Of a stretch of DNA of 64,000 nt, positions 14,882 to 60,409 are shown piece by piece. The stretch covers positions 6,561,534-6,625,533 of the forward strand of contig NC_083409.1 of NCBI RefSeq assembly GCF_020745735.1, in the 5' to 3' direction. Every line of letters begins with the position of its first letter. Position 1 is the stretch's first letter. Made by a program: the position numbers and the translations under genes. The DNA comes from Hemiscyllium ocellatum. Lineage: Eukaryota. Under the pieces are notes generated by a model. It saw nothing but the letters and a program-made list of their open reading frames with translations, was not told where the DNA came from and did no database searches.

Positions 14882-14887
14882 AATAAA
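14882..14887 (+). terminator. Poly(A) signal of C-kappa 1
   Basis: AATAAA about 530 bp past the stop, conserved in the second C copy at 37121. Confidence 0.7.
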
Positions 14888-23942: not shown

Positions 23943-23974
<32 letters not shown>

Positions 23975-37120: not shown

Positions 37121-37126
37121 AATAAA
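37121..37126 (+). terminator. Poly(A) signal of C-kappa 2
   Basis: AATAAA in the same context (GGAATAAAGATGAA) as 14882. Confidence 0.7.
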
Positions 37127-38125: not shown

Positions 38126-38448
38126 GCCCCAAGTGAGGTTGCATGATGGATTAATGACAAGTATGGCCACCATGAAGGTGTCAAGTTCTCTCCTCCTGTC
38201 CCAGCTGTGATGCCCCTCGTGTTAAAAACGTGACTGTGCTCCTTTAGGATGATGACTATGTTCCTGTGTGAGGTAGGGAGGGAAGGTCAGCATCCCCCAA
38301 AGGCAGCACAAGCTGGATCGAAGGGGCATCAAGTGTAAGCATGGGAAGATTGAGGGTGACAGAAGGATGGGGGTTTTTAGGTTGTTATTCATTGTCAGGT
38401 CCCAGAGTATCACTACTTCTGACAGTACCCTGTTTTTTTTTAGAACCT

Positions 38449-39290
38449 CTGACACTCCTGTTTATTTTTTCTCTATTACCCCCACACTACTGCCTAACGG
38501 CGGTCGTGCTTATTTTTTTCCCCAGCACCCATGTTGTGTGTGTGCAGGTGTGAGACACAGTGAGAGACATCATGTGTGCGAATCTTTATTCAGTTTCCAC
38601 CACCAGGAAGAAAGGAAACATCCGAGTGGCCTGTGACAAGCAGTGCCCTTCGCATCAAAGGACAATGCTGTGTGATCAAACAGTGAAGGGGAAGGCAGGA
38701 ATTAAATCCAAATAGAGTTGGAGGGGGAGATAATGCTCTCCACTCCCTGCGGCGTCCACCTGTCCCTGAACAACTCCAGGGTGTTGCTGGAGACCATGTT
38801 GTTCCTTCTCCAAGGACACCCGGTTCTAATGTAACCGCGGAAGTGGTGCAGGCAGTTGGCTCAAGGAACCACTTCCACAGCCCACTGCCTGGACCTGTTT
38901 ATGGCCAGTTTGGCCAAGCCCAGGAGCAGACCCACGAGGAGGTCTTCAGACCTGCGCTCCCTCCTCCGTATCGGGTACCCGAAGATCAGGAGCGTGGGAC
39001 GGAAGTGCAACCAAAAGCAGAGGAGGAAGTTTTTAAGAAAATCAAAAGGGAGTGCAAACGCCCACACCCAATATATACATGGTCCACGGATTCCACAGCA
39101 CCACAGAACAAGCAGTTAGGCTGGGAATCCGTGAACCACCGCTGTGCGCACCACCCTCCACCCCAGATCCCCAAGAGAAAGGGTGAGGACTCCCGCATAG
39201 AGAGCCCTCCACGGGGATCCCCACCAACTGGTGGCAAAGTGGTGTGTCCAGACGGTGGATGAGGGAGAAGAGGTGGACGGTGTGCAGCAG
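38449..39290 (-). mobile_element. Tx1-clade LINE 3' end
   Basis: FTDSQPNCLFCGAVESVDHVYIGCGRL (CCHC-type finger) and EDLLVGLLLGLAKLAINRSRQ, followed by a 3' UTR with an A-rich end. Confidence 0.85.
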
Positions 39291-39686
39291 CAGCGTGAGT
39301 AGTATGCTTACACTCACAGACACACATACAGGCAGGACGGAGTGTAAGCATTTTACACAGTATTGCCTGTCTCTCTACTTAGTGCAGCCTGTCAGTGTCT
39401 CTCTGAGGTATTTGTCTCTTAGCGGTGAATAGAGAATGGGCTTTGTGTTGGAGGTTAAAGATTATGCTTTAGTCTTCTCAAATCATGAACGAAAAACAGT
39501 TCAGCTGATTCAGTCTGAGATGGCAGCTCATTGAGAAGACCAAATGTCCCCATCTGCCTCAGCAGAGACACTGACTGGCAGCACAGCGTAACCTGCTCAC
39601 GCTCAGAGAGCCCTACAGGCAGCATGGAGTGTGAGCATGTTACTCAGTGCTGTCTGGGTCTCTCCGTGTGTGTGTTATTCTGTTCG

Positions 39687-40014
39687 GGAGTTGTTCAGCG
39701 AGAGGTGGACGCCGCAGGGAGTGGAGAGCATTATCTCCCCCTCCAACTCTATTTGGATTTAATCCCTTCCCTCCCCTTCACTGTTTGGTCACACAGCATT
39801 GTCCATTGATGCGAAGGGCACTGCTTGTCACAGGCCACTCGGATGCTTCCTTTCTTCCTGGTGGTGGAAACTGAATAAAGATTCGCACACATGATGTCTC
39901 TCACTGTGCCTCACACCTGCACACACACAACATGGGTGCTGGGGAAAAAATAAGCACGACCGCTGTTAGGCAGTAGTGTGGGGGTAATAGAGAAAAAATA
40001 AACAGGAGCGTCAG
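39687..40014 (+). mobile_element. Tx1 3' tail, inverted copy of 38449-38777
   Basis: ~330 bp near-identical reverse complement. Confidence 0.9.
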
Positions 40015-40599
40015 TATTTCACTGAGTGTGAGTGTTTTCCTCTGTGATGCCTGGAGGTGACTCTGAGGTATTTGTCTCTTAGCGGTGGATAGAGAATGGG
40101 CTTTGTGATGGGGAATGAAGAATAGGCTTTAATCTTCTCAAATTTCAGGTGAAAAACAATTCAGTCTGAGATGGCACCTCAGCGAGTTGGTCAAAGTTAA
40201 AAATCACACAACACCAGGTTAGAGTCCAATAGGTTTATTTGGAAGTACAAGCTTTCAGAGTGCTGCTCCTTCATCTGGTCGCTAGCAGGACAGGAACAAA
40301 GTTCACAGAATTTACAGTGAAATTGAGATGGTAACTTAGAAAGGTGAATACTGAGAGTGTATTCTCAGTAAGGGAAGGACTTCAGAGTCAGTGCACACTG
40401 TGTTCCCGAATGTGTTGCCCGATCACAAGGGGATTTCCTGGAGCCTGGGTCATTGCAGTATTGGGTGCCTGCCCAGCTAATGCTGGTGAGCCATAGTCAT
40501 ATTTCAATGGTCTATTAGCCCTAAGCTAAATGCAGCAATATTACATTCCAGGGAGGGGAGCTGTCTGATGGAGGGAGGTTAAACTCTTGCAGACCCAAG

Positions 40600-40800
40600 A
40601 GGCCCAAACTCACACATTCCTGAACACAATGGGCAATTTCAGCATGACCAATTCACCTAACCTACACATGTTCGGAAACCCACACAGACACAGGGAGAAT
40701 GTGCAATCTGTACAGAAGCAGTCACCTGGGGCTGGAATTGACCCGGGTCCCTAGTGCTGTGAGGCAGCAGTGCTAACCGATGAGCTACCTTGCCACCCAT
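40600..40800 (-). mobile_element. HE1-type SINE, partial
   Basis: tRNA-like head GTTAGCACTGCTGCCTCACAGCACTAGGGACCCGGGTCAATTCC on the minus strand. Confidence 0.85.
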
Positions 40801-41689
40801 TAAAAAAGCCCAAAAAGTTGAGCTTTTCTTAATCTCCATGAGCCTGAGGTGATATAAACTATAAACACACAACCCTCTGCTAGGGAAGGCAGTGGAGGGT
40901 GGAAGCCTCACAATCTTTAAATAGAATAACATTTAAGGATCTGGGACAAGTGTAGGAAATTTGGATTAGAGTGTCTTTCGTGGTAGCTATGTTGGTGCAG
41001 ACTCAATGAGCCAAATGGCCTTTTCTGCGCTGTATCCATCTATGCTCCATGCTGAGAGGACAGTGCAAGCTAATGGTGACTAGGTTAGGTTGTTCCAAGA
41101 TGGCAAACTCATCATCAAGGGTCAGAGGAAATGGCTGAAGCTTCAGTGAAGGTCCAAGTAGGTGCTTGGAAGGAAGGTCAAGGCTAATGGAGACAAGGTC
41201 AATGGAGACTGAGCCAGGGCACAGGGTGCTGGCTGGCATCTCCAGGAGTTGTAATAAGGTATGTGTGGACAAGAGGGGAGTGTGTAGGGAGGGAGTGCAG
41301 TTTCAGATGAAATGCGATCTTTGCCAGCAGCAACGTGACCTACAGCACCAGGGGGTGTCCCTTACTGTGTCAGGCTCCCTGCTGCTCTTTGTGTGATTTC
41401 GCACAGCCACTTGGCTGGTCACCACGCAAAGCCTTGCTCATGTCTACACTACCATCTACACCACAGTCTCCACCCACTGTCTGCACCCAGCATCCAAAGC
41501 CACTGTCTGCACCTCCATTTGCACCTCCCATATTTCTGCTTTGTAAATTGTATCCAATAAATCCATTGAGATTACTGCTACAGAAACCTTAATTTCAGAA
41601 TTGGCTATGATTATCTTCAAACCCTGACCTTCAAAGTCTGTGTTCCACAATGAGATGATTAATATTAATTACTGAATCCCATTTGATTT

Positions 41690-42150
41690 CTGTGATGGCA
41701 GGCCTGACGTATAAGGAGAGGTTGAGGTGGTAAGGATTGTGTTCACTGGAGTTGCGAAGAATAAAGGAAGGGAATCTTGCAGAAAGCTATAAAATTGGAA
41801 CCAGACAAGACAAATGGAGTTTGGATGTTCCCAATGGTGCAAAGTTCAGCACCAGGGCTCATAGTTTAAAGTTGAGAGGTAAACCCTATAGGACAGAGAC
41901 GAAGAAAAATGTCTTCACTCAGAGAGTGGTGATCCTGCGGAATTCTCTGTCACAGAAAGTGGTCGATGCCAAAACATTATGTTTTCAAGAAGGAGGTAGA
42001 GAAATTTCTTGTGGCTAAATAATCAAGTAATATGGGAGTAGAGAGGGATTGCAGTATAATGCTCAATGATCAGCTACAATCATTTTGAATGTCAGAGCAG
42101 GCTGGAGAGTCTGATTGGCCTACTCCTGCTCCTATCCTCTATGTTTCTAT
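41690..42150 (+). mobile_element. CR1 3' fragment
   Basis: ORF 41737-42018 (KKNVFTQRVVILRNSLSQKVV). Confidence 0.85.
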
Positions 42151-43984
42151 GGAGCGTAAAATAGACGGTCAAGTGGAGGTCACTCTGTCGGATGGGTAAG
42201 TATCCATTCACAGATTCCACCCACACCACTACCATTCCATTTTAATTGGGTCCACTCCCTCTCTTCCTACGTCTTTGTTATTTGACCAGTGGCCAAACCT
42301 CCCCACCATCACGTTCCACCCACGTCACACCCCACTACCCTGGCGGGATCTGTGCTTGTTACCCATTGTTTGTTTTAACTTACTAATTGGGTGGTGTGCT
42401 GGTGAGGTTTTCAAAGGCTGGAAGAGTTGAATTCTCATCGCCCCTTGGGCTGATTTTGTTGTGTGCCTCCCTCAATATGGGCGACATAACACGGCTGCCT
42501 CACAGAACGAGGGAGCCAGGTTCGAGAGTCATACAGCACAGAAGTAGGCCCTTCGGCCCACCATGTCAATGCTGACCAACACCCACTAAACTACACTAAT
42601 CCCATTTGCCTGCAGTTGTGTCGAGCTGACTATTCCCTGGCATTATGAGCGCTCATCCGAATGTATTTTAAAGGTTGTGAGATTTTCAGCCTGCACAACC
42701 CTCTCAGGCAGCATGTTCCATGTACCTACCACATGCTGGGTCAAAAAATGCTTTCACCTTAATTTTATGACCTCTGGGTGAGGAGCGGAGGCTGCAGAAC
42801 AGTATGAGAGGTCAGAAGTGGAGAGAGAGAGAACAGTGTGAGGGTGAGGAATGGAGCTTGGAGCAGGAAGACACTTGTGTTCTGGAAAGCAGTACATATA
42901 GGGAAGAGATCCAAGAGCTGGTAGGAATAGTCTCCATGCTTCCTAACAGTAGCTTTATGTTGGGAAAGAGATTAAATCAAGAGGTAATTAGAGCCTGGAA
43001 ATAAGGCTGCTCATTAATGACAAATGACTTTAAGCCTTATGTTGATTGTTGTTCGACAGAATTATCTTTTTTATTCATTCACAGGATGAGGACATCACTG
43101 ACTAGGACAGCACTTATTACCCACCTCTAATTGCCCCAAAGGGCAGTTAACAGTCATCCACATTGCTGTAGGATTGGATTCCCATGTAGGCCAGACCAGG
43201 AAAGGATGGCAGTTCCCTTCCCTAAAGGGCATGAGTGAACCAGATGGGTTTTCCCGACAATCGACATGGATTCATGGTCATCGTTAGGCTCCTAATTGCA
43301 GATTTTTAAAATTAATTTCAAATTCCTCCATCTGCCGCAGTGGGATTTGAGCCTGTGACTCCGGAACAATATCTGGGTCTCTGTGCATTAATCACAGAAG
43401 GTTAGTGTGTAGATACAGTCAGTCATCAGGAAAGCTCATAGAACGCTATGGTGTGTTGTGAGGGGAAACTGAATGCAAGGCTTCATTGCAAGATTCAAGA
43501 TCCTGAGGGCCCTTAACGGGTGGACGTGGAAAGGATGTTTCCTCTTGTGGGAGAATCCAGACCTAGGGATCACAGTTTAAAATTAAGGGAGAGTCCATTC
43601 AAATCAGAGATTCAGAAACATGTTACTCTCAGAGTTGTCAGTCTTTGGAATTCCCTTCCTTATAAAAGGCAGTGGATGCAGAATCTTTCAATATTTTTAA
43701 GGCAGAGGTGGATAGATTCTTGATGACGGAATGGATGGAACATTATCGGAGAATGCAGAGTTGAGGTTAAAATCAGACCAACCATCGAAGGCTGTCGCTT
43801 ATATTTTCTATCTGCAGATTAAGCTGCATGTGCAATAGGCCTCATCTGCACAGTGTTTTCTCCAGCCTTTCACAATGTTATGTGAAAGATACTGGCTCCA
43901 CAATCAATCCATTAACTCTGAGTTGGTGTATTTAAACAATAAAACACATTACAAGTCATTAAGCAGACATTACAACAAGCAATA

Positions 43985-44300
43985 ATGGGCAGCTCAGAGC
44001 CTCAATGGTTAGCACTACTGCCTCACAGCGCGCAGGAAACGCGTTCGATTCCACCCTCAAGCGACTGTATTTGGAGTTTGGACATTCTCGCTGGGTCTGT
44101 GTGGGTGTCTTCTGGGTGCTCCGGTTTCTTCCCACAATCCAAAGATGTGCAGGTCAGGTGAATTGGCCATGCTAAAATGGCCATGGTGTTCGGGGATGTG
44201 TGGGTTGTCAGTTGTCAGGGAAAATGTTGAGTAATAGGGTGGGGGAATGGGATGCTCTTTGGAGATTCGGTGTGGACTTGTTGGGATTCTGTGAATCGAT
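43985..44300 (+). mobile_element. HE1-type SINE
   Basis: tRNA head plus the TCCAAAGATGTGCAGGT core. Confidence 0.85.
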
Positions 44301-44564
44301 CTCGGTCAGTGCAGCTTGCAGGCTCACAGATGATTAACTGATAGGTGGAGTACATACACAGGGGTGGATTTTCTCAAAGGCAATATTTTCACACAACACA
44401 CAGCCACTGAACATCTGGAAGAGACTGTTACATTCTCTCTTGTTGGAGACAGTCATTTGGCTGGCAGTTGTGTGACACAAATGTAACCTTATTCATGTTG
44501 CAAACCCACATCTCTGGCAGTAATCTGCTTTGGAACATCCTCAGGTGATAAAAAGTGCCATACA

Positions 44565-44900
44565 TGTGGGTGCACGATGGCTCAGTGGTTACCACTGTTG
44601 CCTCACCGCACCAGGGAAACACCTCAGGCAGGTCTGTGTGGAGTCTGCACATTCTCCCTGTGCCTGTGTGGTCTTCTCTGGGAGCTCTGGTTTCCTCCAA
44701 CAGTCCAAAGATCTGCAGCCTCAGTAAATTGGCCATGCTAAATTGCGCATAGTGTCCAGGGATGTGCAGGCTACGTGGATTAGACATTGGAAAAGTGCAG
44801 GGATAGAGCAGGGGGCTGGGTGGAGTGCTCTTCAGAGGGGCAATGTGAACTTGATGGGCTGAATGGCCTACTTCCACACTATACGGATTCTGTGATACAA
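44565..44900 (+). mobile_element. HE1-type SINE
   Basis: GCACGATGGCTCAGTGGTTA head, core and CR1-like tail. Confidence 0.85.
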
Positions 44901-45014
44901 ATGCAAGTTCCTTCTTTCCATTCTAGCCCTGAAGCATGCATGTGGTTCTATCTCATATCCACTCAAGAGATGGCAACCCTTTGAATACAGGAGCAGCCTC
45001 GATTCTTTTGGAAA

Positions 45015-45120
45015 TCACTTCTTCCAATCTGTGTCCTTCACAGCCTTGTAGGCAGCAACAATGAAATCCGGAAATAACCCAAAGGTATAATCTTCTGGAC
45101 TCTTCATTAAACTGTGGAAC
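45015..45120 (-). pseudogene. RNASEL: RNase L/IRE1-like KEN-domain terminal exon, probably a premature stop
   Basis: Acceptor TTCTTTTCAG|, phase 2. Reads (E)[36 protein letters not shown] versus human RNase L [33 protein letters not shown] (from memory). The symbol means family-level similarity only. Confidence 0.75.
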
Positions 45121-45439
45121 CTGAAAAGAACAATTAATGTCCAATTCAATGAGGATAATTCTCAGCAATACCTAAATGCTGAGTTTTAGTACTCAGCAGG
45201 CCGCAGAAGTCAAAATAACTGAGTAGATCATTGCTCTGAATTGCTCAAAAATTTCACCTTCACATTTCTGGAGGCTTTGATCAAAAAAGGTCGCTTACTC
45301 CTCTGCAAAATACAGCTTAAAATCAACCCAAACACCCAACCACCCAGCAGAGAGCGGAGCCCTGTACTAACTGGAACCTAGTCAGTGGAAGCACTGTCAC
45401 ATCTGTCTCAGAAGCTTTGTCTATTTAAACCAGAGACTT

Positions 45440-45940
45440 AGTCAGAGAGTCTTTCGGCACAGCAATAGACCCTTTGGTTCAACTCATCCATGCTAACCAG
45501 ATATTCTAAATTAATAGAGTCCCATTTGCCGGTAATTGGCTCATATCCCTCTGAATCCTATCTATTCATAGAGCCATCCAAATGCCTTTTAAATGTTGTA
45601 AGTGTACCAGCCTCCACTATTTTCTCTGGCAGCTCAATCCTCACATGCACCACCCTCTGCATGAAAAAGTTGCTTCTTAGATCCCTACCATTTGCTTCCT
45701 TTCTTACCTTAAACCTGTGCCCTCTAGTTTTCAACTCACATACTCTGGGAAAAAGACCTTGGCTATTCATCTTATACATGCCCCTCATGATGTTGTAAAC
45801 CTCTATAAATTCACTCCTCAGCCTCCACCGCTCCAGGGAAAAATAGCCCCAGTGTAGTCAGCCTCTCCCTACAGCTCAAACCCTCCAACCCCAGCTACAT
45901 TGTTGCAAATCTTTTTTGCCCCCTTTCTAGTTAAACAACA
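45440..45940 (-). mobile_element. CR1 3' fragment
   Basis: ORF 45558-45788 (RSNFFMQRVVHVRIELPE). Confidence 0.9.
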
Positions 45941-46039
45941 TTGTTCCTGTAGCAGGAAGACCAGAAAGGAGCCGTTTATTCTCAAGGTGTCCTCACCAAT
46001 GGCCACTTTGGGGGACAGCCAGAATATGGCAGCCCGAAC

Positions 46040-48345
46040 ACTCTCATTTTGTGGGAACAAGAGAGACTCACGGTTGGTGTGTTGCCTCCCAAGTATCAGG
46101 GTTTGTGGTATCTCTGATCATGTTTTTCGGATCCTTGAGGGGGGAGGGGGAGCTGCCCCAAGTCATGTTCCACATAGGCACCAACCACATTGGTAGAAAG
46201 AAAGGTGGGGATTTAAGGCAGAAATTCAGGGAACTAGGGTGGAAGCTTAGAGCTAGAACAAACAGAATTGTTATCTCTGGTTTCTTGCCCGTGCTACGTG
46301 CTAGTGAAGCGAGGAACAGGGAGATAGCAGAGCTGATCATATGGCTGCAGGGATGGTGCAGGAGGAAAGGTTTTGGATTCTTGGATAGTTGGAGCTTTGT
46401 TTCTGGGGGAAGTGGGACCTCTACAAACAGGATGGCCTTCACCTGAACCAGAGGGGTAACAATATCCTGGGGTTAGAATTTGATAACGCTCTTCGGGGCT
46501 GGGGTTTAAACTAATGTTTCAGGGGGCTGGGAACCTGAATTGTAGTCCCAGTGTACAGGAGGTTGAGGGCAGTGAGGTCAGGGATAGGTTTACAAGTTTG
46601 TGAGAGAGCACCAGCAATCAGGGTGTTGGTTTGAAATGTGTGTACTGCAACTCCAAGAGCAACTAGAATAAGGTGGGTGAACTTGCAGCATAGATTGGTA
46701 CCTGGGATTTTGATATTGTGGCCATTTCGGAGACATGGTTAGAGGTCTGATAGAAATGGTTGTTCCGGGATTTAGATGTTTCAGCCAGAACAGAGATGAT
46801 GGTAACAGAGGGAGGGGTATGGCATTGTAAATCATGGGTTATATTACAGCAGCTGAGATAACATATGAGGACTCATCCATTGAGGTAGTTTGGGCTGAGG
46901 TTAGAAACAGGAAATGAGAGGTCACCCTGTTGAGAGTTTTCCATAGGCCTCCAAATTGTTCCACGTATGTAGAGGAAAGGATGGCAAAGATGATTCTCTC
47001 TAGGAGTGAGTGTAACTGGGTAGTTGTTATGGGAGACTTTAAATTCCCCAACATTGATTGGGAATACTATAGTTCAAGTAGTTTAGTTGGGCCAATTTTT
47101 GTTCAATGTGTGGAGGAGGGTTTTCTGACACAATATATAGACAGGCCAATAAGGGGTGATGCCATATTGGATTTCGTCCTGGGGAATGAAACCAGCCAGG
47201 TGTTAGATTTGGAGGTAAGGGAGCACTTTGGCGATAGTGACCACGTTTCGACTATGTTTAAAATGCCAATGGGCAGGGATAGGTGTATATTGCAGGGAAA
47301 GATGCATAACTGGGGGAAAGGCAATTATGATGTGATTAGGCTTGTTTAACAAGGGGAGTTTGGTAATTATACGCCAGTGAGCCTTACTTCGGTTGTGGGT
47401 AAGGCATTCGAAATGATTACAAGTGATAGGATTTATAATCATCAGGATTTATAGTTTTGTGAAGGATAGGTCATGCCTAACTAACCTTATTGAGTTTTTT
47501 GACAATGTGACAAAAACAGTTAATGAAGGTAAAGTGGTTCTTGTGGTGTATGTGGACTTCAGTAAGGCATTTGATAAGCCTCCACACAGTAGGCTATTGT
47601 ACAAGATACGGAGCTTCAGGATTGAAGGTGATTGAATGAATTGGATCAGAAATTGTCAAGCTGAAAGAAGACAGAGGGTGATTGTTTGTGGGAGATGTTA
47701 ATCCTGGAGCTTAGTTACCAGAGGTGTGCTGCAAGGCTCCGTATGGAGGTCACTGCTGTTTGTCAGTTTGATAAATGATCTGGATCTGGGTACAGAAGGG
47801 TGGGGTAATAAATTTGCGGATGACACTAAGGGAGGCAGAGTTGTAGATAGTGCCAAAGCATGATGTGGGTTACAGAGGGACATAGATAAGATGCAGAGCT
47901 GGGCTGAGAAGTGGCAAATGGAATTTAATGCAGAAAAGTGTGAGGTAGTTCACTTCAGAAGGGATAACAGGAATGCATAGTACTAGGTTCATGGTAAAAT
48001 TCCTGGCAGTGTATATGAAAAGAGCAATCTCGATGTCCAGGTGCATAAATCCCTGAAGGTTACCACCCAGGTTGATAGGGTTGTTAAGAAGGGACATGGT
48101 GGGCTGGTATTTATTGGTAGGGGGATTAAGTTTCGGAGCCACGATGTCATGTTTCAGCTGTACAATGCATTGGTCAGTCCACACCTGGAGTATTGCATAT
48201 AGTTCTGGTCATCACATGAGAGGGAGGATGTGGAAGCTTTGGAAAAGGTTCAGAGGAGATTTGCAAGGACGTTGCGTGGTATGGAGGGAAGGTCTTATCT
48301 GGAAAGCCTGAAGGAACTGAGGCTGTTTTCATTGGAGAGATGAAG
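46040..48345 (+). mobile_element. Long CR1 remnant: ORF1 esterase, ORF2 endonuclease and RT, internally deleted and frameshifted
   Basis: VMFHIGTNHIGRKK..VISGFLPV; VVVMGDFKFPNIDWE; VYVDFSKAFDKPPHSRLL; KFADDTK near 47810. Confidence 0.93.
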
Positions 48346-48439
48346 GCTGATTTGCCCCTTACCAAAATACAAACCTTTATATTTATCTAAATAAACCCCA
48401 TCTCCCACTCCTCGTCCATTGGTCATCTGATCAAGCATT

Positions 48440-49030
48440 GATCATATATTATAAACCTGAGCATCTATAAGGCATTTGTGTGAACACACCTGGGGGTTAT
48501 CTCTTCTTATTTGAGGAAGGACGGGGTGGCACTGGAGGCTGTTCAATGGATGTTCCCCAGAATGATCCCAGGGATGAAAGGGCTGTCCTACGAGGAACAG
48601 GTAAAGAGCTTGGACTTGTACTCACTGGAGTTCAAAAGAACGAGGAGGGGTCTGATTGAGGGAGAGAAAATGTGAAAAGAGATTTATAAGGTGGACGTTG
48701 AATTGAAGCTCCCCTTTGTGGGACAACCTCGAACAAGAGGTCATCAATACAGAGAGAGAGGAGTTGGTTTCAAATCTAAGATGCGGAGAAACTACATCTC
48801 CCAGAGGGTTGTGAATCTGTGAAACTCAATGCCCCACAGTGCAGTTGAGGCAGAATCTATCAACAGATTCAAGAACGATGTGTTTCTGATGAAAAGTGAG
48901 ATAAAGAGCGATGGGGAGCAGGCAGGAGAGAGGAGTTGAGACCAGGATAAGATCAGCCATGGTCATGTTAAATGGCGGAGCGGGCTCGAAGGACTGAATT
49001 GCCTTCTCCCGTTCCTAACTCCTATGTTGA
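48440..49030 (+). mobile_element. CR1 3' fragment
   Basis: ..SQRVVNL*NSMP.. and a CR1 tail. Confidence 0.8.
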
Positions 49031-49349
49031 ACACACAGTCAAGACTGACACTGCAAAACTGAGGGACCTGTTGTCTTTCAGGTGAGATACAAAACACGGG
49101 TCCTGCCACAATACATCGAACTTTATTATCTCCCCCAGTGACAAATGCTGGAATTTGAATTCAAATATCAAAGCAAGCTTCATTAATGGTGACAACGATA
49201 ATGATCCCTGATTGCTGTCCAGCCTCAGCCTTACCCAGTCTGAACTTCATCTGACTCCAGCCCCTTCTGAGAAGCCACAGCAAGGCCAACAGTTCGAGGG
49301 CAATTCGTCTTGTGTAACAAATACTGATCTATACTAGTGACACCCACCT

Positions 49350-50520
49350 CCCAGATAACAGAATGCAGCAGAGATTGGTGTCAGCCACAATTATCGGACC
49401 AGACTCCCAATGAGATGGGGAAATGTTTAAAAATGAATTCAGCTCAGTATGGAACAAGTCCCCACTTGTTAACCCATCATCGCTGGCAAAATAAGTGAGA
49501 GAAAACAGAAAACTGAAGGCGAGAACACTCGAATGTGGGAATATCAGTGAGAATTCAGGCAACTGAAGGAAGATATGAAGAACTGCAAAGGAAGACAAAA
49601 TGGGAAGCAAGAGTTACAGAACGTGATGGAGAATGAGACTTGCAATGGGTCACAAGAATAACACAAATGTTTTACTTAAAAATTAGAAAATCAAGGGGGC
49701 TCCAGTGCAATGTGTGCCTTTTAAAAACAAACCGGGAATTCCATAAATAAGACTAAGGGAATGGCTGATATGTACAATAATTAGTTGTGTCAGTCTTCAC
49801 AATCAAGGAATGGGATAATGCAGCTTCCATTCCAGGGAGGTTAGTAATGAATTAAAGATTGGAATTCGCAAAACTTGATACGTGCCAGAAAACAGCATTG
49901 GAATGCGAACAGCTCTAAAGGCTGACAGGTCTCCAGGACCTTAGGAGTTTAAAGAAAGGGGGGATGAAGTTTCAGAAGCTTTTCCCTTCAGGTTCCAAAG
50001 AAGCAACCATTCCTTTATTTTGGAAGATATCCTGCTGTAACTCTGCGGGTTCAAGAAAGATGAGAGAGGGAACCGAGGAAATTATATCCTGGTCAATCTA
50101 ACATCTCTTTTGATGGTTCCATTGGAATCTATAATTAACAGCCGAGAGAATGAACATATAGAGAATTGGAAATAGCCCCCATAAATTTGTGACGGGTAGG
50201 TTCTGACTGACAAACCAAATGCATTAACTAAAAGAGTTGATCGGACTTATAGGCTTATTAGCTTCCAGAAGTACTTAATAATTTTCCACAAAACAGGATG
50301 CTGACAAATACTAAAACCCATGGGATTGAAGATGAATGTTTGACTTGGTTCAGAGGCTGGTTTAGTGACAGATAACAGAGAAAGAAAGTAACGAGTGGTG
50401 TTCCACAAGGATTCTGTGGTAAGGCCTTAACTACTTACTGTATGTGTTAATGAGAATCATTGTTCCACATTGACACAAAGACTGATGGAATAGTAAGCGG
50501 TGAAGATGGTGCTTTTGCTT
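49350..50520 (+). mobile_element. Highly decayed CR1 ORF2 fragment
   Basis: Residual GNY..VNLTS and GRFCLTN motifs. Confidence 0.55.
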
Positions 50521-50574
50521 AACATTGACTCTGAGGACATGGCTCTTGCTGTCTGGGCCAGCATTTATTGCACA

Positions 50575-50920
50575 TTCCTAGTTGCCCTTGAGAATCATAG
50601 AATCATCATATGGTGTGGAAGAAGGCCATTCAGCCCATCAACTTCTCACTAATCCACCAAAGAGCATCCCATCTCGATCATCCCCATCCCTGTAATGCTG
50701 CATTTCCCATCGATATTCAACCCTGCATGCACATCTCTGGACACAATGTGCAATTGAGCATGGCTAATCCACCTAACCTACACATCTATGGATTGTGTGG
50801 AGGAAACTCACTCAGACATGGGGAAAATGTGCAAACTCCACACAGACAGTTGTCCCAGCGTGGATTTGAACCAAGGTTCCTGGCGCTGTGAGGGAAGCAG
50901 AGTTAATCACTGACGCACAA
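50575..50920 (-). mobile_element. HE1-type SINE
   Basis: Reverse-complement SINE core GCAAACTCCACACAGAC and head. Confidence 0.8.
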
Positions 50921-51444
50921 TGCTGCCCTTTGCAAGGTGGTGGTGAGCTGCCATCTTGAACCGCTGCAGTCCATGTGCTGTAGATAAACCCACAATACCC
51001 TAAGGGAGGGAAGTCCAGGATTTTGACCCAGCGACACTGAAGGAACACTAACATATTTTCAAATCAGGATGCTATGTAGATTAGAGAGAACTTGTAGGTG
51101 GTGGTGTTCTGTGTACCTGCTGCCCTTGTCCTTCAAGATGGAAATGGGCGTGGGTTTGGAGAGTGCTGTCCCAGGAGATTGGTGAATTCCTGCAGTGCAT
51201 CTTGTTGATGGTGCACACGGCTGCAACTGAGTATCAGTGGAGGATGGAGTGAATGTTTGTAGGTGTGGTCCCAATCAAGCAGGCTGCTTTGTACTGGATG
51301 ATATCAAGCTTCTTGACTGTTTTTGGAACTGCACCCGTCCAGGTATGTGGGGAGTGATCCATCACACTCCGATCCAAAGCTTGACTGATCTTTTTTTAAT
51401 TCATTTACAGGATTGGACATCACATGATATGTCAACATTTTTTT

Positions 51445-52350
51445 GCCCAGAATCAAGTGGGGTGGCACAGAGACTAGCACCGGGAGGGACATAAGTTTGA
51501 TTCCACCCTTGGGCAGCTGATTTTGTGACGTTTACACGTTCCTCACTGTGTCTGCCTGGATTCCCTCCAGGTGATCCGGTTTCCTCCCACAGTCCAAAAA
51601 TGTGTGGGTTAGGTAGAATGGCCTTGGGAAATGCAAGGTTATAGGGAAGTGGGTTTGGGTGGGATTCTCTTTGGAGAGGCGGTATTGGCTGAATGGCCTG
51701 TTTCCACATTGTAGGGATTCTATGAATTTCTTCACTCAGAGGGTTGCGAATCTTTGGAATACCCATCCCACGATACTTAGTCGATACTTAGTCATTTGAT
51801 TAAATTCAAGATAGAGACCACCCACATGTGGGGAGGAAATAGCGTAGTGGTATCATCACGAGATTGTTAATCCAACGAGCCAAATCATGTTCTGGGGGAT
51901 CTGGGTTCAAATCCTGGCAAAGGCACGGAGTGGAGTTTAAATTTTAAAAACTCAACTTCAGAGTCTAATGATGACAATTGTTTGGGGAGTGTACCATCGA
52001 ACCCACTAATGTCCTTTACACTGCTGTCCTGCTGTCCTACTAACTGACATATCAGTCCAGACCCACAGCAATGAAGAATCATCAAATCCCTACTGTGTGG
52101 AAGAAGGCTGTTCAGCCCATCAAGGCAAAGCAGCATCTCACCCACAGCCACCTCCCTCTCCTATCCTATCCCTGGAGCCTTACACTTCCCATGGTCGATG
52201 CACCTTACCTGCACATCTTTGGACTGAGAGAGGAACCCTCCGCAGACATAGGGAGAACATGCAAACTCCACACAGACAGTTGCCTGAGGGTGGAATCGAA
52301 CGCAAGTCTCTGGTGTTGTGAGGCAGTGGTGCTAGCCATTGTGACACCCA
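51445..52350. mobile_element. SINE cluster: HE1 + (51445-51730), second tRNA-SINE + (51830-52070), HE1 - (52075-52350)
   Basis: tRNA-like heads and HE1 cores. Confidence 0.75.
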
Positions 52351-52755
52351 TTCCACATCGGAGATCGTGACGTCTAACCACTTATTCCCAGGCTGGGACT
52401 CTGCTTTAGAATTCCCAAGTCTGGGCATATCCTTCCAAAATCTACCCTGTCAGGTCCCTGGAGAATTTGAAATGTTTCAGTGAAATCTCCTCCCAACCTT
52501 CTAAATTCCAGGGATGAGATCTGCAATCTCCTCCTGGATTCACATAGAATCTGATGATAAATCCCATTCCTCACCCAGTCCCCTCTCTCGATCATGTGAC
52601 AATCCTCTCAACCCGACACATGAACTGTTGCTGGGTTTGATCATCTCAGTAACAGTTTCAAGGAGGGAAGGAGAAAGAAAGACTCTCTCTGTTTTGAATT
52701 AATGCTAAAACTTGGAAAAGTACGGAAATATTGTCACCAACAATTGTTCACATAC

Positions 52756-52880
52756 TCTTTCTATTCATCAAAGTGCTGGATGAGGTTTCTTATGAATTTC
52801 AGGAGGTCACTGGTGGTGTCCTTATATTCTTTGTTCTTGCCTTGTCTCTTGTTCGTGTCATTTAGGAGAACGACGTCATC
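52756..52880 (-). pseudogene. RNASEL: RNase L/IRE1-like KEN-domain penultimate exon with an in-frame stop
   Basis: TTCCTTCGAG| 125 nt |GTATGT. Reads [40 protein letters not shown] versus RNase L [23 protein letters not shown]. TAG at 52763-52761; the phase-2 end joins 45120 in frame. Confidence 0.85.
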
Positions 52881-53789
52881 CTCGAAGGAAATGAACAACA
52901 GAGTTTGTTTTCTCTGTTGATTGAATTCACCTGAAGAAGGGGTGAGGCTCGTGTCCTATAATAAACCTGTTGGACTATAACCTAGTTTCTTATGATTTTT
53001 GACCTTGGGGATTCCTGGATACAAGGTGTTCAGTAAAGATAAGAAAGAGAGAAAATTGCGAGAAGTGGTAGGATTGTTCTGGAGTCAGACAGTGCTGACC
53101 AACCTTAAGTCCTGAGATATGAAGAGTGAACTCTACTGGGCTTTAACTCACTGTTACCATAGTAAAACAGGGGTTACCCATTTCACAAGAGAGGAAATGG
53201 AAATAACAAACCAGGTGCATGTTAAACACCCACCCAGTCCCGGAGAGAGGGGGACACAAACAGGGGCATTCTCAGACAGAAAGAATGGTAAAAATGGTAT
53301 CACCCCGAGAGTGAAGGGTGGGGTGGGGATAGTGACAGCGACACCACACACGCCCAGAGAGTGGGGACAGTAACACTGACACATTTAAAACTATATCATC
53401 ACAAGTAAGAATTCAAACAGCCACCCACTAAGTCACACAATGTTGAAGATGCACTGTTATCATCAAAACATGTTTGCAAACGTCTTCACAACATGTAAGG
53501 GGAGAGAACCATTGAAAACTGCATTATCACGAGTGAAGGTCCATTTAAAACGTAGACCATGATGTTAAATGTTCCCAGCTGTAAACAACACTGGTGCATT
53601 GATGTAATTATCTTATTAAACAATATTTAAACCACGGCCAAATATTTTCCTGCAGTGTATTTAAAATATCAAGAGGCTTTCCGCATTGTTGGTTTGATCA
53701 GTGCCCCATGAACTCCAACAAAAGAATGAGAACAGACTCTTCATACGGAGCTGGCTCCCGAGAATCCAATTCAACAGCAGGGATCAAAG

Positions 53790-54860
53790 AACAAGGAACA
53801 ATACAACACAGGAACAGGCCTTCGGCCCGACAAGCCTCTGCTGACATATTTTGCCCTTCCATACTAAAACTATCTTCACCTACAGGATTCGTATCCCTCT
53901 ATTCCCTTCCTATTCATGCACTAGTGCAGATATTTCTTGAATACTTCTATTGTGTCTGCTTCCACCCCCTCCTCTGACAGTGTGTTCCAGGTACTCAACT
54001 CCCTTTGTGTGAAATACTGGCCTCACACATCTCTTTTAAATTGCCCCCTCCACCCGCACCTTGAACCCCGGTCCCCGAGTAAGTGATCCCTCCATCCTGG
54101 GAAAAAGCCTCATGTTTTCCACTCTACCTATGTCATTCAAAACTTAATATACTTCTATGACGTCACACTTCATTTTCCCTCACTCTGGTGAAACCAAACC
54201 CAGTCTATCCAACCTTTCTTCAGAACTAAAATTCCCCACACCAAACAATATCTATGTCAACATTTTCTGCACCATCTTCAAAACATCCACATCCTTCTGG
54301 TGGTGTGGTGACCAGAACTGTATACAATAATCCAAATGTGGCCTAACTAATGTTCAATAAGCTGCAGCATGACTTGTCTATCCTTATACTCAATGCCCCT
54401 TCCAAAGAAGGCAAGCAGGCCAAAAGCCTTTTTCAAAACCTTACTTCCCTGTGCTGCCACCTTCAGTGATCTGAGAACATACACACCCAGATCCCTATGT
54501 ATATCAATACTCCAAAGGATTCATCCGTTCACTGTATAATTCCCACCTGTACATCACCTTTCAAAATGCATCACCTTACATTTGTCTGAATTAAACTACA
54601 TCTGCCATTATTTTTGTCCATGCATCCAACTGATCTATATCCTGCTGTACCCTCTGACAATCTTTCTCAATATCTGTAACTCTACCAAACTTTGTATCAA
54701 CTGCAAACATTTAATTAGACCAGCTGCACTTTCCTCTAAACCATTTATGTAGACCACATACTGCAGAGTACCCACCACTGACCCCTGTGGGACGCTAGGA
54801 ATCACAGCCCTCCATTCTGAAAATCATCCTACCATCGCTGCTCTCTGTCTCCTCTGACTC
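53790..54860 (-). mobile_element. CR1 RT/3' fragment, paralog of 28491-29590
   Basis: Direct alignment by eye. Confidence 0.88.
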
Positions 54861-56579
54861 AGCGAGTTCTGTATCCAATGCTGGGAACATTTTAGACAAG
54901 ACACCTGGTTGCCAGATCGTTACTGCACCTTGATCCAGTTCATTCAGAAAAAGAACAATGACAATGTGCAGATTGGAGAACTGGCCCCTACACCTGGGCC
55001 TGAGGCAGGGGCCCAAGCTCCAACATACTGGCCTCACTTCACACCAGCCTTCACACAGAGTGAAGTCATGATCTCCAGCCATCAATTCCTCTGGGATCGG
55101 GATGGAGTGAGGGAACAGGGACAATGTCGAAAAGTCAATAAGGAGTAAAGCAAGATGGAGAGGGTGTGATGGAAAGTGTTTGATGGAGGAACCATTCTTT
55201 GTGATACGCAATACTGACATAGTCCATTCATATCACAGAATGAACAAAACAGCACACCGTGAAGACAATCAAACGTCTTATCAAAGCATTTCTTTTTTCG
55301 CAAAACAATAGCATGCAGAACTTTTTTATTGTGGTGTGATCAATATCATGGTCCAAAGATCCTCGCAGAGCCCCAGTTTATTACTCAGTAATGAGGGATA
55401 CCGATGGGGGGGCTGGGGTTATCTTGATGAAGAAGCAGTGCTTCAAAAACTTGTGATTTCAAATGAACCTGTTGGGCTCGAACCTGGTGTTGTGTGACTT
55501 CTGACTTCTTATTGTTCGGGCATGGTGAAACTTCGCATAACTACAGAGTACTTGTACTACAACTGAGGATTATGGGTAATTACTCCATCCATTGGCCATG
55601 AACAAACACAAACACTCCATTGGATTTCAGCGGGAATGACCTGTCAGTTGCTTCCTAGATATCATTTGATTCACTAACACTCTCTCCAGAGCAATTAGGG
55701 AAGGACCGACACATCAACACACTCCCTCCCGCCACCAATCTCAGGAGAAATTAAAATAAATGGCGTATAATGCAAATGATCAAACTGGTGAGGCTTGAAT
55801 TCATCTCTTTGAAAGACTGGAGTCTCGGGCCAGAATAGAGCCATGACATGGGTGAACCCGATTTGTCACACAGGAAGTTGGAGTGTCCTTCAGATTGACA
55901 CTGGGATCAGCAAAAAATGAATTACACTCAAAGATCTAATAAATGACTGTCAAAGTGTGCCTCCAAACTGCAGAGAACGGCTCTTTAGGCTTCACGCGTC
56001 CTCATCTCTATCCTTGGTTGTTGCCCTTCCCTAACTGTCCTGGAGAGGGCGGTGGTGAGCCATGAGTTTCTCGAAGAGGATCTGACAGAGGGACAAGGTC
56101 ATGTCCTCGGCCTGAGCACAACTGCATGACCTGCTGTGCTTTTCCAGCCTCACATTTTTTGACTCTGAGCACAATGATCCGTCAGGAGAATGAGCTGTGA
56201 TGCAAGAGGAAGCGTGGGAGTGTTGGAATGGCACCGGCAGCCTAGTCAGCCTGCAGAGGGTCAGAAACAGATTTGATGAATGAGCTGATATCCTCCCGAG
56301 CTGAGATGCAAACTCAGGCCTTCAGAGCCACACAGTTTACATTGTTACTGACTGTGGCTCCATGGGCAATGTTCCTGCCTCATCGTCAAAATGGTCATCG
56401 GATTGAAAGCCATCTCAGAAATGAGAACACAGAATCCAGGCTGAGACTGCGGTGCACTGCTGAAAGTTGCACAGTCTCTGACACCATCATTTGAGGTTCC
56501 TCCACCACCACAGGGGGCTTGACAAGATCCCATTCTGTAGAGATTCCTCAGGTATCCTGCTCAATGATGTTTGGTATGC

Positions 56580-57196
56580 TTTCTTTCATTGGTCAGAGCA
56601 TTGGGTACAGGAATTGGGAGGTCATGTAGCAGTTGTACAGGCCATTGCTTAGGCCACTGTTGGAATATTGTGTGCAATTCTCGTCTCTTCCTATCGGAAA
56701 GATGTTGTAAAACATGAAAGGGTTCAGGAAAGATTTACAAGGATGTTGCCAAGGTTGGAGGATTTGAGCTAGAGGGAGAGGCTGGACAGGCTGGGGCTGT
56801 CTTCCCTGGAGCGTTGGAGGCGGAGGGGTGACCTTATAGAGGTTTACAAAATTATCCGGGGTATGGATAGTATAAATAGGCAAAGTTGTTTCCCTGGGGT
56901 CGGGGAATCAAGAACGAGTGGGCATCGGTTTCGGGTGAGAGGGGAAAGATATAAAAGAGACCTAAGGGGCAAATCTTTCACACAGAGGGTGGTATGTGTA
57001 TGGAATGAGCTGCCAGAGGAAGTCGTTAAGGCTGGTACAATTGCAAAATCTAAGAGGCATTTGGATGGGTATATGAATAGGAAGAGTGTGGAGAGATATG
57101 GGCCGGGTTCTGGCAGGTGGGATTGATTGGGTTTTGGGATATCTGGTTGGACTGAATGGTCTGTTTCCGTGCTGTACGTCTCTATGACTCTATGAA
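56580..57196 (+). mobile_element. Young 5'-truncated CR1
   Basis: ORF 56863-57126 (GKSFTQRVVCVWNELPEEVV) and a CTATGA tail. Confidence 0.9.
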
Positions 57197-59627
57197 TAGA
57201 TTTGTATCGTCTTTGTTTCCTGTCTGTGGGACTCATCATCTTGTCTATGAAAGTGACTGCACTGTGCTCACAGCCTTCAATATCCTGAGATGATTAAACA
57301 AAACTGCACCAGCAAGACTTCTCTCTCCTTTATCATGTAGAAGCGTAAACACTGAAACTTCAGCTGAAAGGCTTTTTGCACCATTTTAACCTGCTGCCTG
57401 GGCATTTCCTTCCAATGTCTGAGATGGCTATCAGGCTGGGATGGAGGCTGACAGATCACATGGAATCCTTCAGACAAGGTATACAAGGGCACAGTCCAGG
57501 TTTGCTGCAAACATTGGTCTTCCTTCTATTGAACGGCTGGGAGCTTGTCTATGGCGGTTTCTACTGCACATCTTCCCTGGAAATATCACAGACTTTACTG
57601 AAATGGAATGAACTGAAAGAAGAGAAGAAAATGGGAAGAATTAACCAGGCAAGGGTCAGCAACAAAAAAGGTGGGAGCGTGTGGGAGATTCAATACCCTG
57701 AAAGAAATTCCAACTGAGTTTCCCAAGAAAAGCTCAAATCGTTACCAGGAGAAAACAAGGAGAATCCTCACTGACATAAACAGGCTGAGAGTCAGAGACC
57801 CTGAGCCTCCTGTGCCTGACTCTCTCTGAGGCATTACAGTCAAGGACTGTTCATGTGTCAATGAAGGGAGACTTGGTGACATGGGGTTATATTATAATCA
57901 ATGATCAGAGGGGTATAGATTAAAGATAAATGGCCAAAGGTTAAGAGGGAACATTAGGAAAACGTTTTGACCAGGATGGTGGTGGCAGTCTGGGACTCAC
58001 TCCTTGCAAGGTTGGTTGAGGCAGAACCTCTCCCATAACATTGACGTATTTTGATGTGCAGCTGTGATGCCAAAGTATACAGGGATACGGGCCAAGTGCT
58101 GGACCATGGAATTAGAATAGTGAGGTGGTTGTTTTTACTGGCTTTGACTCATTGGGCGGAAGAGCCTTGTTCTTGTAGACCTCTTTTGGATGTCTGACTC
58201 TGCCAGGACTCCAGCAATGTGGCTGACCCTTACCTGCCATTTGAAAGACCGAGCAAGCCACTCAGTTTCAGGGCAGTTAGGGATGGAGAAAAAATGCTGG
58301 TCTTGCCAGTGACACTCTCATCCCAACCTCAGTGATAACACCGTCACCTGAACCTGCAGGTTTCAAGCCCCACTCCAGACACTGGAGCACTATCCTGAGG
58401 CTGGCAAACGCAAAAATGCCATCTGCTGGATGATCGGTTAAACCACTGCCCTCAGGTCGATGTGAATAAGGTCTTTGTGGCCATCTCAGGGAAAATCTCA
58501 CCAGTGTGCTGACCAATGCTTCTCTTATAACCAATGGCATTAAAACAGATACATAAACAAAATACTGCAAATCTCAAATAGAAGAGTGATGCTGGAGAAA
58601 GGGAACAGGTGCAGCCTCTGTGGGGAGAGTTGGATTAATTTTTTGTTTTTTTCAAAAAGGCAGCACATTTTTATTTTATTTTATTTTATATTGTCTTACA
58701 TTATTTTATTTAAATCTCGTTGAAAAAAAATTAGCCCGCTTGATTGGCACCACATCCACACAAATCCATCCCCTCCACACCGACGCTCAGTCACTTCTCT
58801 GTGTATTATTTACAAGATGCACTGCAGATTCACCAAAAATCCTGAGACAACATCTTCCAAAGTCATGATTACTTAAATCAAGGACAAAGGCAGCAGATAC
58901 AATGGGAATATCACCCCAGCAAGTTCCCCTCCATGCCATTCACTAGATTGACTTGGAATAATAACACTGTTCCTACATTGTCACTGGGTCAGAATCCAGG
59001 AATTCCCTTCCTAAATGCATTGTGGATCTACCTACAGCACACAGACTGTAGGGGTTCAAGAAGGCAGCTAATCACCGCCTTGTCCAGGGCAATTAGACAT
59101 GGACAGTAAAAAGGCTGGTAAAAGTAAGAGTAGGCGTGTTTAAGGACCAGAAAGTGACACTGTGATGTTTCAGTTTTTCCTGAACATTGGTGTGACTACA
59201 TCTCAAATACTGAGGGTGGTTTGATCTCCTTATTGAAGGAAGAATATAAATGCTTTGGAGGTGTTTCAGAGGAGTTTTACTCGATAGATCCCTGGAATGA
59301 GTGGGCTGTGTGATGAGGAAAGGTTGGAAAGACTGGCCTTGTTCTCAGTGGAGTTTAGAAGAGTGAAGGATTTTCCTGTCCCATAGTATTCTCCAACTCC
59401 CTATCTGCCTCCCTCACGGGTCATACCTCATGCCCCGTATTGAACTGTGCGGTCCTGAGGCCTATAACTTTCTTCTGGAACAAAGTCTCCAGGTATCTCC
59501 GCCACTCCCGAATGTATCATTTTTTCAAATCAGCCTCCAACTGGGAGTTCTTATAGTTTTATACATTCACTACACATGTATTTACGCTGAATCATTTCAA
59601 TTAAATAAATATTTTGATCTCACTTAC

Positions 59628-59981
59628 AAATGAAAAATATCCATTTCTTCATTGGACCAGTCATTGTCTTCAATCTCTGTTTTGAAGTTTCAGTACTTTG
59701 AATTTTTAAACCTTCCCTAATGGACATGTCCTGAAGCAGTCTATTTAGAGAGTCCCTCATACTTAACAATTCCCAGCTCATCTGCTTACCAGACTCCTAT
59801 TCTCTTGTTTATCATTTTGTTTCATTCAAACCAAGTGCATGTGCAGGCTCCCCGCAGCTGAAGTGACAGTTCAAAATCAGTTTGGAAAAGTAAAGGTAGG
59901 CTCCGTCCCCGAGTTCTCCGAACTTCCACACTAACCAAACTTGCCAGCATTCCCCTCTGTGTTGGCTGCACTCAGTGCTAG
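59628..59981 (-). pseudogene. Decayed phase 1-1 exon, death-domain-like (copy 2)
   Basis: CTGCAG| 354 nt |GTAAGTGAG, no frameshift. Reads ..FGELGDGAYLYFSKLILNCHFSCGEPAHALGLNETK**TRE*ESGKQMSWELLSMRDSLNRLLQDMSIREGLKIQSTETSKQRLKTMTGPMKKWIFFI. Confidence 0.5.
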
Positions 59982-60409
59982 CTGCAGTATTATGGCTGCC
60001 ATGTATTTATACTGTTTCTGATTTGTATCACTTCATTCTGTTGTGCTGTTGTTCAGGATCTGGGTTAAGCTCACTAATTTCTCAGTCGAGAGCTTCCTTT
60101 TTTCAGCCTGACAGAGACTTTACATGTGCAAACAGCAAATGGGACTTCAATGTTGGAATCTGTTTTCAGGATTGATGGGCTCGATGGTTTGATTCAATGA
60201 GATGAGGTATGAAGTACCTGTGACTCTTGTTGCAATCCAACCTTCTCTGTCTAATCTCTTCAGGGATCGACATTTCAGGTATAACCCTCCTTCAGGACTC
60301 AGGGTGGGTGTTGGAGGAGCTGTGTGGTGAGGTGGGGATAGGTTGAGAAAGGTAGAGAGTATGACCTGATTGGTTGATGGGAGAGGTAAATTTGGATGGC
60401 GTTATCGCG

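What the first reader, a model, noticed from the sequence alone, without database searches (positions are those of the whole stretch)
45015..52880. Hidden two-exon RNase L/IRE1-type KEN ribonuclease gene remnant among Ig kappa segments
Seen in sequence: two minus-strand exons 7.6 kb apart with canonical splice sites join in frame (GA|G). The product is [77 protein letters not shown]. Established: DLLKFIRN..H and P..YF...FPD are KEN-domain hallmarks of RNase L and IRE1. As I recall, the phase 0/phase 2 boundaries match the last two human RNASEL exons. Inference: this is a pseudogenised member of a shark RNase L-like antiviral family sitting in an Ig light-chain region. I found no kinase or ankyrin exons.
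Basis: partly seen in the sequence, partly recalled or inferred. Interest (0 to 1): 0.8.

Follow-up and report, generated by a model that had tools for sequence, protein, structure and literature searches.

The report
Dead RNase L gene tail copy
This is a broken copy of only the last two exons of a shark's antiviral RNase L gene, sitting among decaying antibody light-chain gene segments; it is an ordinary dead gene fragment, not a hidden working gene.

Summary
With X at the stops, the peptide passes Pfam's threshold for the RNase L/IRE1 ribonuclease (KEN) domain, but only its C-terminal 57%. It is RNase L, not IRE1: 71-72 of 79 residues match the full-length "2-5A-dependent ribonuclease-like" proteins of bamboo and epaulette sharks. 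Those proteins find nothing else in the 64-kb window, so residues 1-793 of 873 have no match here.

Against the real Chiloscyllium punctatum gene, the window is collinear from mid-intron 5 through exons 6 and 7 into at least 7.7 kb of 3' flank. Similarity stops about 220 nt upstream of the first exon. Beyond that lies a copy of an Ig light-chain cluster's 3' flank.

The copy carries K->TAG and Y->TGA, has lost the original stop, and has 7 further private amino-acid changes.

Best reading: a non-functional partial duplicate caught up in Ig kappa cluster duplications.

Earlier scan notes report many such tails elsewhere in this genome, and one follow-up reached the same verdict. I could not test that.

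The stops were not checked in reads, because the single read-laying run failed.

The parts
52756..52880 (-). Exon A: copy of the penultimate coding exon (exon 6, 125 nt) of shark RNASEL. It encodes the KEN-domain motif [12 protein letters not shown].
   Evidence: 118/125 nt identical to L001 37398-37522; E 3e-17.
52761..52763 (-). In-frame TAG where functional hemiscylliid genes have AAG (Lys).
45121..52755 (-). Intron (GT...AG, 7,635 nt) homologous at both ends to intron 6 of the real gene.
45015..45120 (-). Exon B coding part: copy of the last coding exon (exon 7). It ends at a premature TGA (45017-45015) where functional genes have TAC (Tyr).
   Evidence: E 2e-16.
45000..45002 (-). Position of the ancestral stop codon (TAG in C. 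punctatum), mutated to TCG here.
52881..53098 (-). Retained proximal piece of intron 5. Similarity to the real gene ends here.
   Evidence: window 53098-53008 matches L001 36692-36780, and window 53007 onward matches L001 37241 onward.
53099..53443 (.). Junction stretch of unassigned origin, between RNASEL-derived and Ig-flank-derived sequence.
53444..60050 (.). F'': a copy of the 3' flank of Ig kappa cluster 1 (window 15354-25119). A further copy lies at 28348-32677. It occupies the place where RNASEL intron 5 and exons 1-5 would be.
37923..45014 (-). 3' UTR and 3' flank collinear with the 3' flank of the real C. punctatum gene, up to the end of that contig.
36327..36566 (+). Ig kappa C exon copy (C2) with an in-frame stop. 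It is convergent with the RNase L tail and ends 8.4 kb from the tail's TGA.

Best explanation
This is a non-functional, unprocessed partial duplicate of the shark RNase L (RNASEL) gene. The copied block runs from the middle of intron 5 through exons 6 and 7 and on into the gene's 3' flank. It was caught up in the segmental duplications and inversions that multiply Ig kappa V-J-C clusters in this orectolobiform-type shark. It encodes at most the C-terminal 57% of the KEN ribonuclease domain. It lacks the ankyrin 2-5A sensor, the pseudokinase dimerisation domain and the first part of KEN, and it is further broken by two premature stops. It therefore does nothing as a protein and has drifted neutrally.

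Shown: the homology, the truncation point, the lesions and the Ig-derived flanks.
Inferred: that it was carried along passively with Ig cluster duplication, and that it is one of many such copies. The latter rests on earlier scan notes that I did not test.
For: Identity as RNase L:
- The joined peptide hits PF06479 at positions 52-124 of 127.
- 71-72 of 79 residues are identical to Chiloscyllium and Hemiscyllium RNase L-like proteins.
- The PDB sequence search finds only RNase L.

Truncation:
- tblastn with Mustelus (P0002) and C. punctatum (P0082) full-length proteins finds only aa 794-873. Everything else has E >= 0.087.
- DNA collinearity with the real gene locus L001 covers exons 6 and 7, intron 6 and at least 7.7 kb of 3' flank at about 85% identity.
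- That collinearity stops at window 53098 = L001 36692, about 1 kb short of exon 5, and L001 has no assembly gap there.
- The sequence upstream (53444-60050) is a copy of the 3' flank of Ig cluster 1.

Decay:
- K->TAG, Y->TGA and the original TAG->TCG.
- Seven further amino-acid replacements are private to this copy, while functional hemiscylliid tails differ from one another at only 1-2 of 81 residues.
- Codon changes against C. punctatum are 10 non-synonymous to 4 synonymous, close to the neutral expectation.
- The neighbouring Ig V and second C exons also carry stops.
Against: - The exons are better conserved than the flanks (93.4% against 84.7%, Fisher p 6e-5). This is expected if only the functional lineage is constrained, but a period of constraint or gene conversion on this copy is not excluded.
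- Splice sites and the catalytic-motif residues (R and H of RNxxxH, and the Tyr before FPD) are still intact.
- The stops and the junction were not confirmed in reads.
- Expression was not tested.
- I could not inspect other copies or the full-length gene in this genome.
Confidence: 0.88

Rival explanations
1. It is the 3' end of a complete RNase L gene, functional or recently pseudogenised, whose upstream exons lie further upstream in or beyond the window.
For: The splice sites of both exons are intact. Shark introns are long: the real genes span 20-33 kb.
Against: The 11 kb upstream in the window holds no RNase L exon. Similarity to intron 5 of the real gene ends about 220 nt upstream of exon A and is replaced by Ig-cluster flank sequence. 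There are two premature stops.
Confidence: 0.03
2. It is a whole-gene pseudogene that later lost its 5' part, for example by insertion or inversion of Ig-flank sequence into intron 5, rather than a copy that was partial from the start.
For: The window shows several inverted and direct rearrangements of the same Ig flank, so secondary rearrangement is plausible. Earlier notes mention one copy with ankyrin remnants elsewhere (untested).
Against: No trace of exons 1-5 appears anywhere in 64 kb. The outcome, a dead tail, is the same either way.
Confidence: 0.07
3. It is a new chimeric gene in which the KEN exons are spliced to other upstream exons in the window, such as the 'death-domain-like' ORF at 59.6-60.0 kb or the exon at 63.55-63.70 kb.
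For: Exon A has an intact acceptor. Earlier first-reader notes s1-233900 and s1-233920 flag upstream ORFs on the same strand.
Against: There is an in-frame TAG in exon A. Only 57% of a KEN domain is encoded. The 59.6-kb ORF has no Pfam hit. It lies in a duplicated Ig flank, and the paralogous copy at 16.9-17.3 kb does not keep the frame open.
Confidence: 0.01
4. The fragment is an IRE1 (ERN1/ERN2)-derived KEN remnant rather than RNase L.
For: The Pfam family PF06479 covers both.
Against: It is 90% identical to proteins with Ank + Pkinase + Ribonuc_2-5A architecture that are annotated as 2-5A-dependent ribonuclease-like. Introns and flanks are collinear with that gene. The PDB search finds RNase L only.
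Confidence: 0.005

Closest known systems
Full-length RNase L ('2-5A-dependent ribonuclease-like') of hemiscylliid sharks (Chiloscyllium punctatum XP_072429488/GCC19658, C. plagiosum XP_043555869, Hemiscyllium ocellatum XP_060686052)
   Same: The last two coding exons have the same boundaries and phases. Identity is 93% at nucleotide level and 90% at amino-acid level. Intron 6 and the 3' flank are collinear.
   Different: Residues 1-793 (ankyrin repeats, pseudokinase, first part of KEN) have no match in the window. There are two premature stops, the original stop is lost, and there are 7 private replacements.
Unprocessed (duplicated) pseudogene fragments created by segmental duplication, as are common beside amplified immune-receptor loci
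   Same: It retains introns and flanks of the parent, has a breakpoint inside an intron, carries disabling mutations, and shows a near-neutral substitution pattern.
   Different: Nothing in kind. The particular pairing of an RNASEL tail with shark Ig kappa clusters was not found in the searched literature.
Mammalian RNase L (human 4OAV/4OAU, pig 4O1O) KEN domain
   Same: The [12 protein letters not shown] motif and the Y...FPD motif align.
   Different: Identity over the fragment is only about 30-34%. The mammalian protein is complete and active as a 2-5A-induced dimer, which needs the domains absent here.

Membership tests
RNase L (RNASEL orthologues) | Sequence closest to RNase L rather than to IRE1/ERN | tested here: met
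   71-72 of 79 aa identical to hemiscylliid RNase L-like proteins. The PDB phmmer search hits RNase L only. DNA is collinear with the real gene.
RNase L (RNASEL orthologues) | N-terminal ankyrin repeats (2-5A sensor) | tested here: not met
   tblastn of P0002 and P0082 against the whole window finds no ankyrin exon.
RNase L (RNASEL orthologues) | Pseudokinase domain | tested here: not met
   No hit to aa 497-742 of P0082 in the window.
RNase L (RNASEL orthologues) | Complete KEN ribonuclease domain (PF06479, 127 positions) | tested here: not met
   Only profile positions 52-124 are encoded. The exon for the first part is absent.
RNase L (RNASEL orthologues) | Conserved KEN motif residues in the retained part (R and H of RNxxxH, and Tyr before FPD) | tested here: met
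   These residues are present in the alignment. Their catalytic role is taken from my own knowledge of human RNase L and was not tested.
RNase L (RNASEL orthologues) | Uninterrupted reading frame | tested here: not met
   TAG at 52763-52761 and TGA at 45017-45015 in the assembly. Not verified in reads.
Unprocessed partial-duplicate pseudogene | Intron and flank homology to the parent gene, ending inside an intron | tested here: met
   The break is at window 53098 = L001 36692, in intron 5.
Unprocessed partial-duplicate pseudogene | Relaxed constraint relative to functional orthologues | tested here: met
   This copy has 7 private amino-acid replacements plus 2 stops, against 1-2 differences among functional hemiscylliid tails. 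Codon changes are 10 non-synonymous to 4 synonymous.
Unprocessed partial-duplicate pseudogene | A full-length parent gene exists elsewhere in the same genome | not testable with these tools
   Only the window is available. Earlier notes s1-200253 and s1-200246 place an RNASEL about 17.7 Mb away; this is unverified.
IRE1/ERN1-2 | Best match and gene structure of IRE1 | tested here: not met

The most novel reading that the evidence does not exclude
The RNASEL tail is not a mere passenger. On this reading it is kept in Ig kappa cluster duplication units because the block downstream of the C exon, which includes the RNASEL 3' end, carries a cis-regulatory or transcription-terminating function for the convergent Ig cluster. 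Alternatively, the tails could serve as gene-conversion donors for the KEN domain of the working RNase L gene.
Probability: 0.04. Interest if true: 0.55.

Novelty: new member of a known kind. Interest (0 to 1): 0.15.

Why it matters
In itself it matters little: it is a dead partial gene copy. Its modest value is as a marker. It suggests that a shark Ig kappa cluster once lay tail-to-tail with RNASEL. The RNASEL tail, which has a recognisable parent and a definable breakpoint, could then be used to order and date the duplications that built the multi-cluster light-chain locus. It also warns annotators that KEN-domain hits in shark Ig regions are fragments, not extra antiviral genes.

Tried and rejected
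No read-level check of the stops, the junction, copy number or expression was possible.
- Exon B alone gave no Pfam or PDB hit. It is recognised only when joined to exon A or compared with shark proteins.
- The search for short annotated KEN-tail proteins found nothing.
- No DNA or neighbouring genes were available for the Mustelus, C. plagiosum or Hemiscyllium RNASEL loci, and P0007 was not on record. Whether the real gene is followed by an Ig cluster could therefore not be checked. The C. punctatum contig ends 7.8 kb past the stop codon.
- The ORF at 63555-63752 gave only weak SAM/PNT-like PDB hits, no Pfam hit above threshold and no atlas hit. Its identity as CEP350 was not tested.
- The 'HPLLW' matches at 28.66 kb and 50.3 kb have E > 4, and the better one is on the opposite strand. 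I rejected them as noise.
- The death-domain-like ORF at 59.6 kb was rejected as an exon.
- Literature searches found no paper linking RNASEL or CEP350 to shark Ig kappa clusters.
Full report
**Observation**

On the minus strand, exon A runs 52880-52756. Its acceptor is ttccttcgag|GATGAC and its donor is AAAGA|gtatgt. Exon B starts at 45120 after ttcttttcag. An in-frame TAG lies at 52763-52761 and a TGA at 45017-45015.

**Is it a KEN domain, and of which type?**

- Exon A alone hits Pfam PF06479 (Ribonuc_2-5A) just below threshold (21.6 bits against 23.3).
- In the PDB it hits only pig and human RNase L, with no IRE1 match.
- Exon B alone hits nothing.
- Joined, with X at the two stops, the peptide scores 36.9 bits (E 4.6e-9) over profile positions 52-124 of 127. 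That is the C-terminal 57% of the domain.
- A phmmer search of exon A against 1.84 billion representative proteins returned an 811-aa protein of Mustelus asterias named "2-5A-dependent ribonuclease-like".
- A follow-up search found full-length proteins with Ank + Pkinase + Ribonuc_2-5A architecture in at least 14 cartilaginous fishes, essentially one per species.
- The window peptide is closest to the hemiscylliids Chiloscyllium punctatum, C. plagiosum and Hemiscyllium ocellatum, at 71-72 of 79 residues. It is 76% identical to Heterodontus, 65-70% to lamniform and carcharhiniform sharks, and 30-34% to mammals.
- It shares states seen only in the hemiscylliid sequences, such as YKAV and the T that begins the Tyr codon which is now TGA. 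The copy therefore arose within that shark lineage (inference).
- RNase L is already known to be functional in a cartilaginous fish (Callorhinchus; PMC10400998).

**Is the rest of the gene there?**

No. tblastn of the Mustelus protein and of the closest full-length protein (C. punctatum isoform X1, 873 aa) against the whole 64-kb window finds only aa 794-873, at E 3e-17 and 2e-16. Every other match has E >= 0.087.

**Comparison with a real gene**

The C. punctatum locus was retrievable as L001 (BEZZ01001581.1). Its coding exons map at:
- 10001-10042
- 22195-23886 (the large ankyrin/kinase exon)
- 28821-28997
- 30823-31044
- 35579-35713
- 37398-37522
- 42896-43013

The window's two exons correspond to the last two, with identical boundaries. 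The window is collinear with L001 as follows:

| Window | L001 | What it covers |
|---|---|---|
| 53007->51321 | 37241-38967 | End of intron 5, exon 6, start of intron 6 |
| 45752->43784 | 42275-44198 | End of intron 6, exon 7, 3' UTR |
| 42083->40604 | 44358-45872 | 3' flank |
| through repeats to 37923 | to 50766 | 3' flank up to the contig end |

The interruption in intron 6 coincides with an N run in L001.

A finer search shows that window 53098-53008 also matches L001 36692-36780, with about 460 nt present only in L001. Beyond window 53098 there is no similarity to intron 5, exon 5 or anything further upstream. Only 58-60% multi-copy repeat matches remain. L001 has no gap at that point. 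The copy therefore begins in intron 5, about 220 nt upstream of exon A.

**What flanks it**

Self-comparison of the window shows the following:
- An Ig kappa cluster on the plus strand. The V exon is at about 4.6-4.9 kb and carries two stops, J is at 5385 behind a 23-spacer RSS, and C1 is at 14078-14350.
- A partial second cluster at 32.8-37.2 kb, whose C2 exon (36327-36566) carries a stop.
- A roughly 10-kb 3' flank of cluster 1 (F, 15354-25119). It recurs inverted at 28348-32677 and again, also inverted relative to F, at 53444-60050.

The last copy of F sits exactly where RNASEL intron 5 and the upstream exons should be. On the other side, the tail's 3' flank runs into the convergent C2 exon, whose end lies 8.4 kb from the tail's TGA. 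The RNase L tail is therefore embedded between Ig-cluster-derived segments. The 345 nt between 53099 and 53443 are unassigned.

**State of decay**

Against C. punctatum the two exons differ at 16 of 243 nt. Ten codon changes are non-synonymous and four are synonymous. They include AAG->TAG and TAC->TGA, and the original stop TAG is TCG here.

Nine of the ten non-synonymous changes are private to the window copy, at positions where the three functional hemiscylliid proteins agree. Those proteins differ from one another at only 1-2 of 81 residues.

The flanks are 84.7% identical (3994/4718, mismatches only) against 93.4% for the exons (Fisher p 6e-5). If divergence is split evenly between the two lineages and only the functional lineage is constrained, about 21 exon differences are expected and 16 are seen. 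No constraint on this copy needs to be invoked, although a short period of constraint or gene conversion cannot be excluded.

**Rivals**

- A complete gene with distant upstream exons is contradicted by the break in intron homology and by the Ig-derived upstream flank.
- A chimeric gene using upstream ORFs is contradicted by the TAG and by the incomplete domain. In addition, the ORF at 59.6 kb flagged earlier has no Pfam hit and is not kept open in its paralogous copy at 16.9-17.3 kb.
- An IRE1 origin is excluded.
- Whether the copy was partial from the start or lost its 5' part later cannot be decided from one copy.

**Earlier notes of this scan**

The notes report RNase L KEN-exon pairs beside Ig kappa clusters at many places over at least 17 Mb of the same sequence piece. 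They also report stranded CEP350 last-exon copies and a possible full-length RNASEL about 17.7 Mb away. One follow-up (s1-228427) concluded 'dead RNase L tail fragment copied with an antibody light-chain gene'. My independent analysis of this window reaches the same verdict. I could not test the multi-copy claim, the CEP350 identity of 63552-63698, or the existence of the parent gene in this genome.

**Not achieved**

- Runs guessed to be RNA, from this and three related organisms, hold about 9-12% of the sampled words of 52500-53100. This is what the 69-nt stretch of exon A that is identical to the real gene would give. It says nothing about this copy.

**Verdict**

The feature is real and was read correctly. 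It is an ordinary dead partial duplicate of a known gene, and the same thing has been seen repeatedly in this genome by this scan. Interest is low. Its residual value is as a marker for reconstructing how the shark Ig kappa clusters were amplified next to RNASEL.

Noticed in passing
window 4493-5420 (+): The Ig kappa V exon of cluster 1 carries two in-frame stops in FR3 (NRFT*VSK*FTG). The J segment (LTFGNGTKLRLS) at 5385 follows a 23-spacer RSS-like signal. This cluster looks like a pseudogene even though its C exon (14078-14350) is open.
   Followed up: partly
window 32805-37165 (+): A partial second kappa cluster (J-C intron plus C exon) is 71-79% identical to 11343-14930. Its C exon (36327-36566) has an in-frame stop (WK*DG).
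   Followed up: partly
window 15354-25119, 28348-32677, 53444-60050: There are three copies (78-85% identical) of the 3' flank of the Ig cluster. The second and third are inverted relative to the first. The first two form a near-palindrome around about 26.7 kb with a 3.2-kb spacer.
   Followed up: partly
window 63555-63752 (-): A 66-aa open frame gives weak SAM/PNT-like matches to ETV6 (single-domain chains E about 0.08). I could not obtain a CEP350 sequence to test this.
   Followed up: partly
P0001 (Larimichthys crocea TMS01848.1, 449 aa): This teleost hypothetical protein is made of three tandem repeats of a KEN-tail-like module (LLRFIRNLxEHY...FPDLF) with no ankyrin or kinase part. Teleosts are thought to lack RNase L, so this family may deserve a look.
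   Followed up: no
L001 36781-37240: About 460 nt in intron 5 of the C. punctatum RNASEL are absent from the window copy. This is either an insertion in that lineage or a deletion here.
   Followed up: no
window 60867-62584 (+) vs L001 15540-17135 (+): A 1.7-kb match at 71% identity to intron 1 of the real RNASEL, but in the opposite relative orientation to the tail. It is probably a shared repeat element.
   Followed up: no
window 37560-40602: A block of tandem and inverted repeats of roughly 300 nt (one arm pair is 96-97% identical: 38449-38777 and 39687-40014). It is also present several times at the end of the C. punctatum contig (L001 47271-50766).
   Followed up: no
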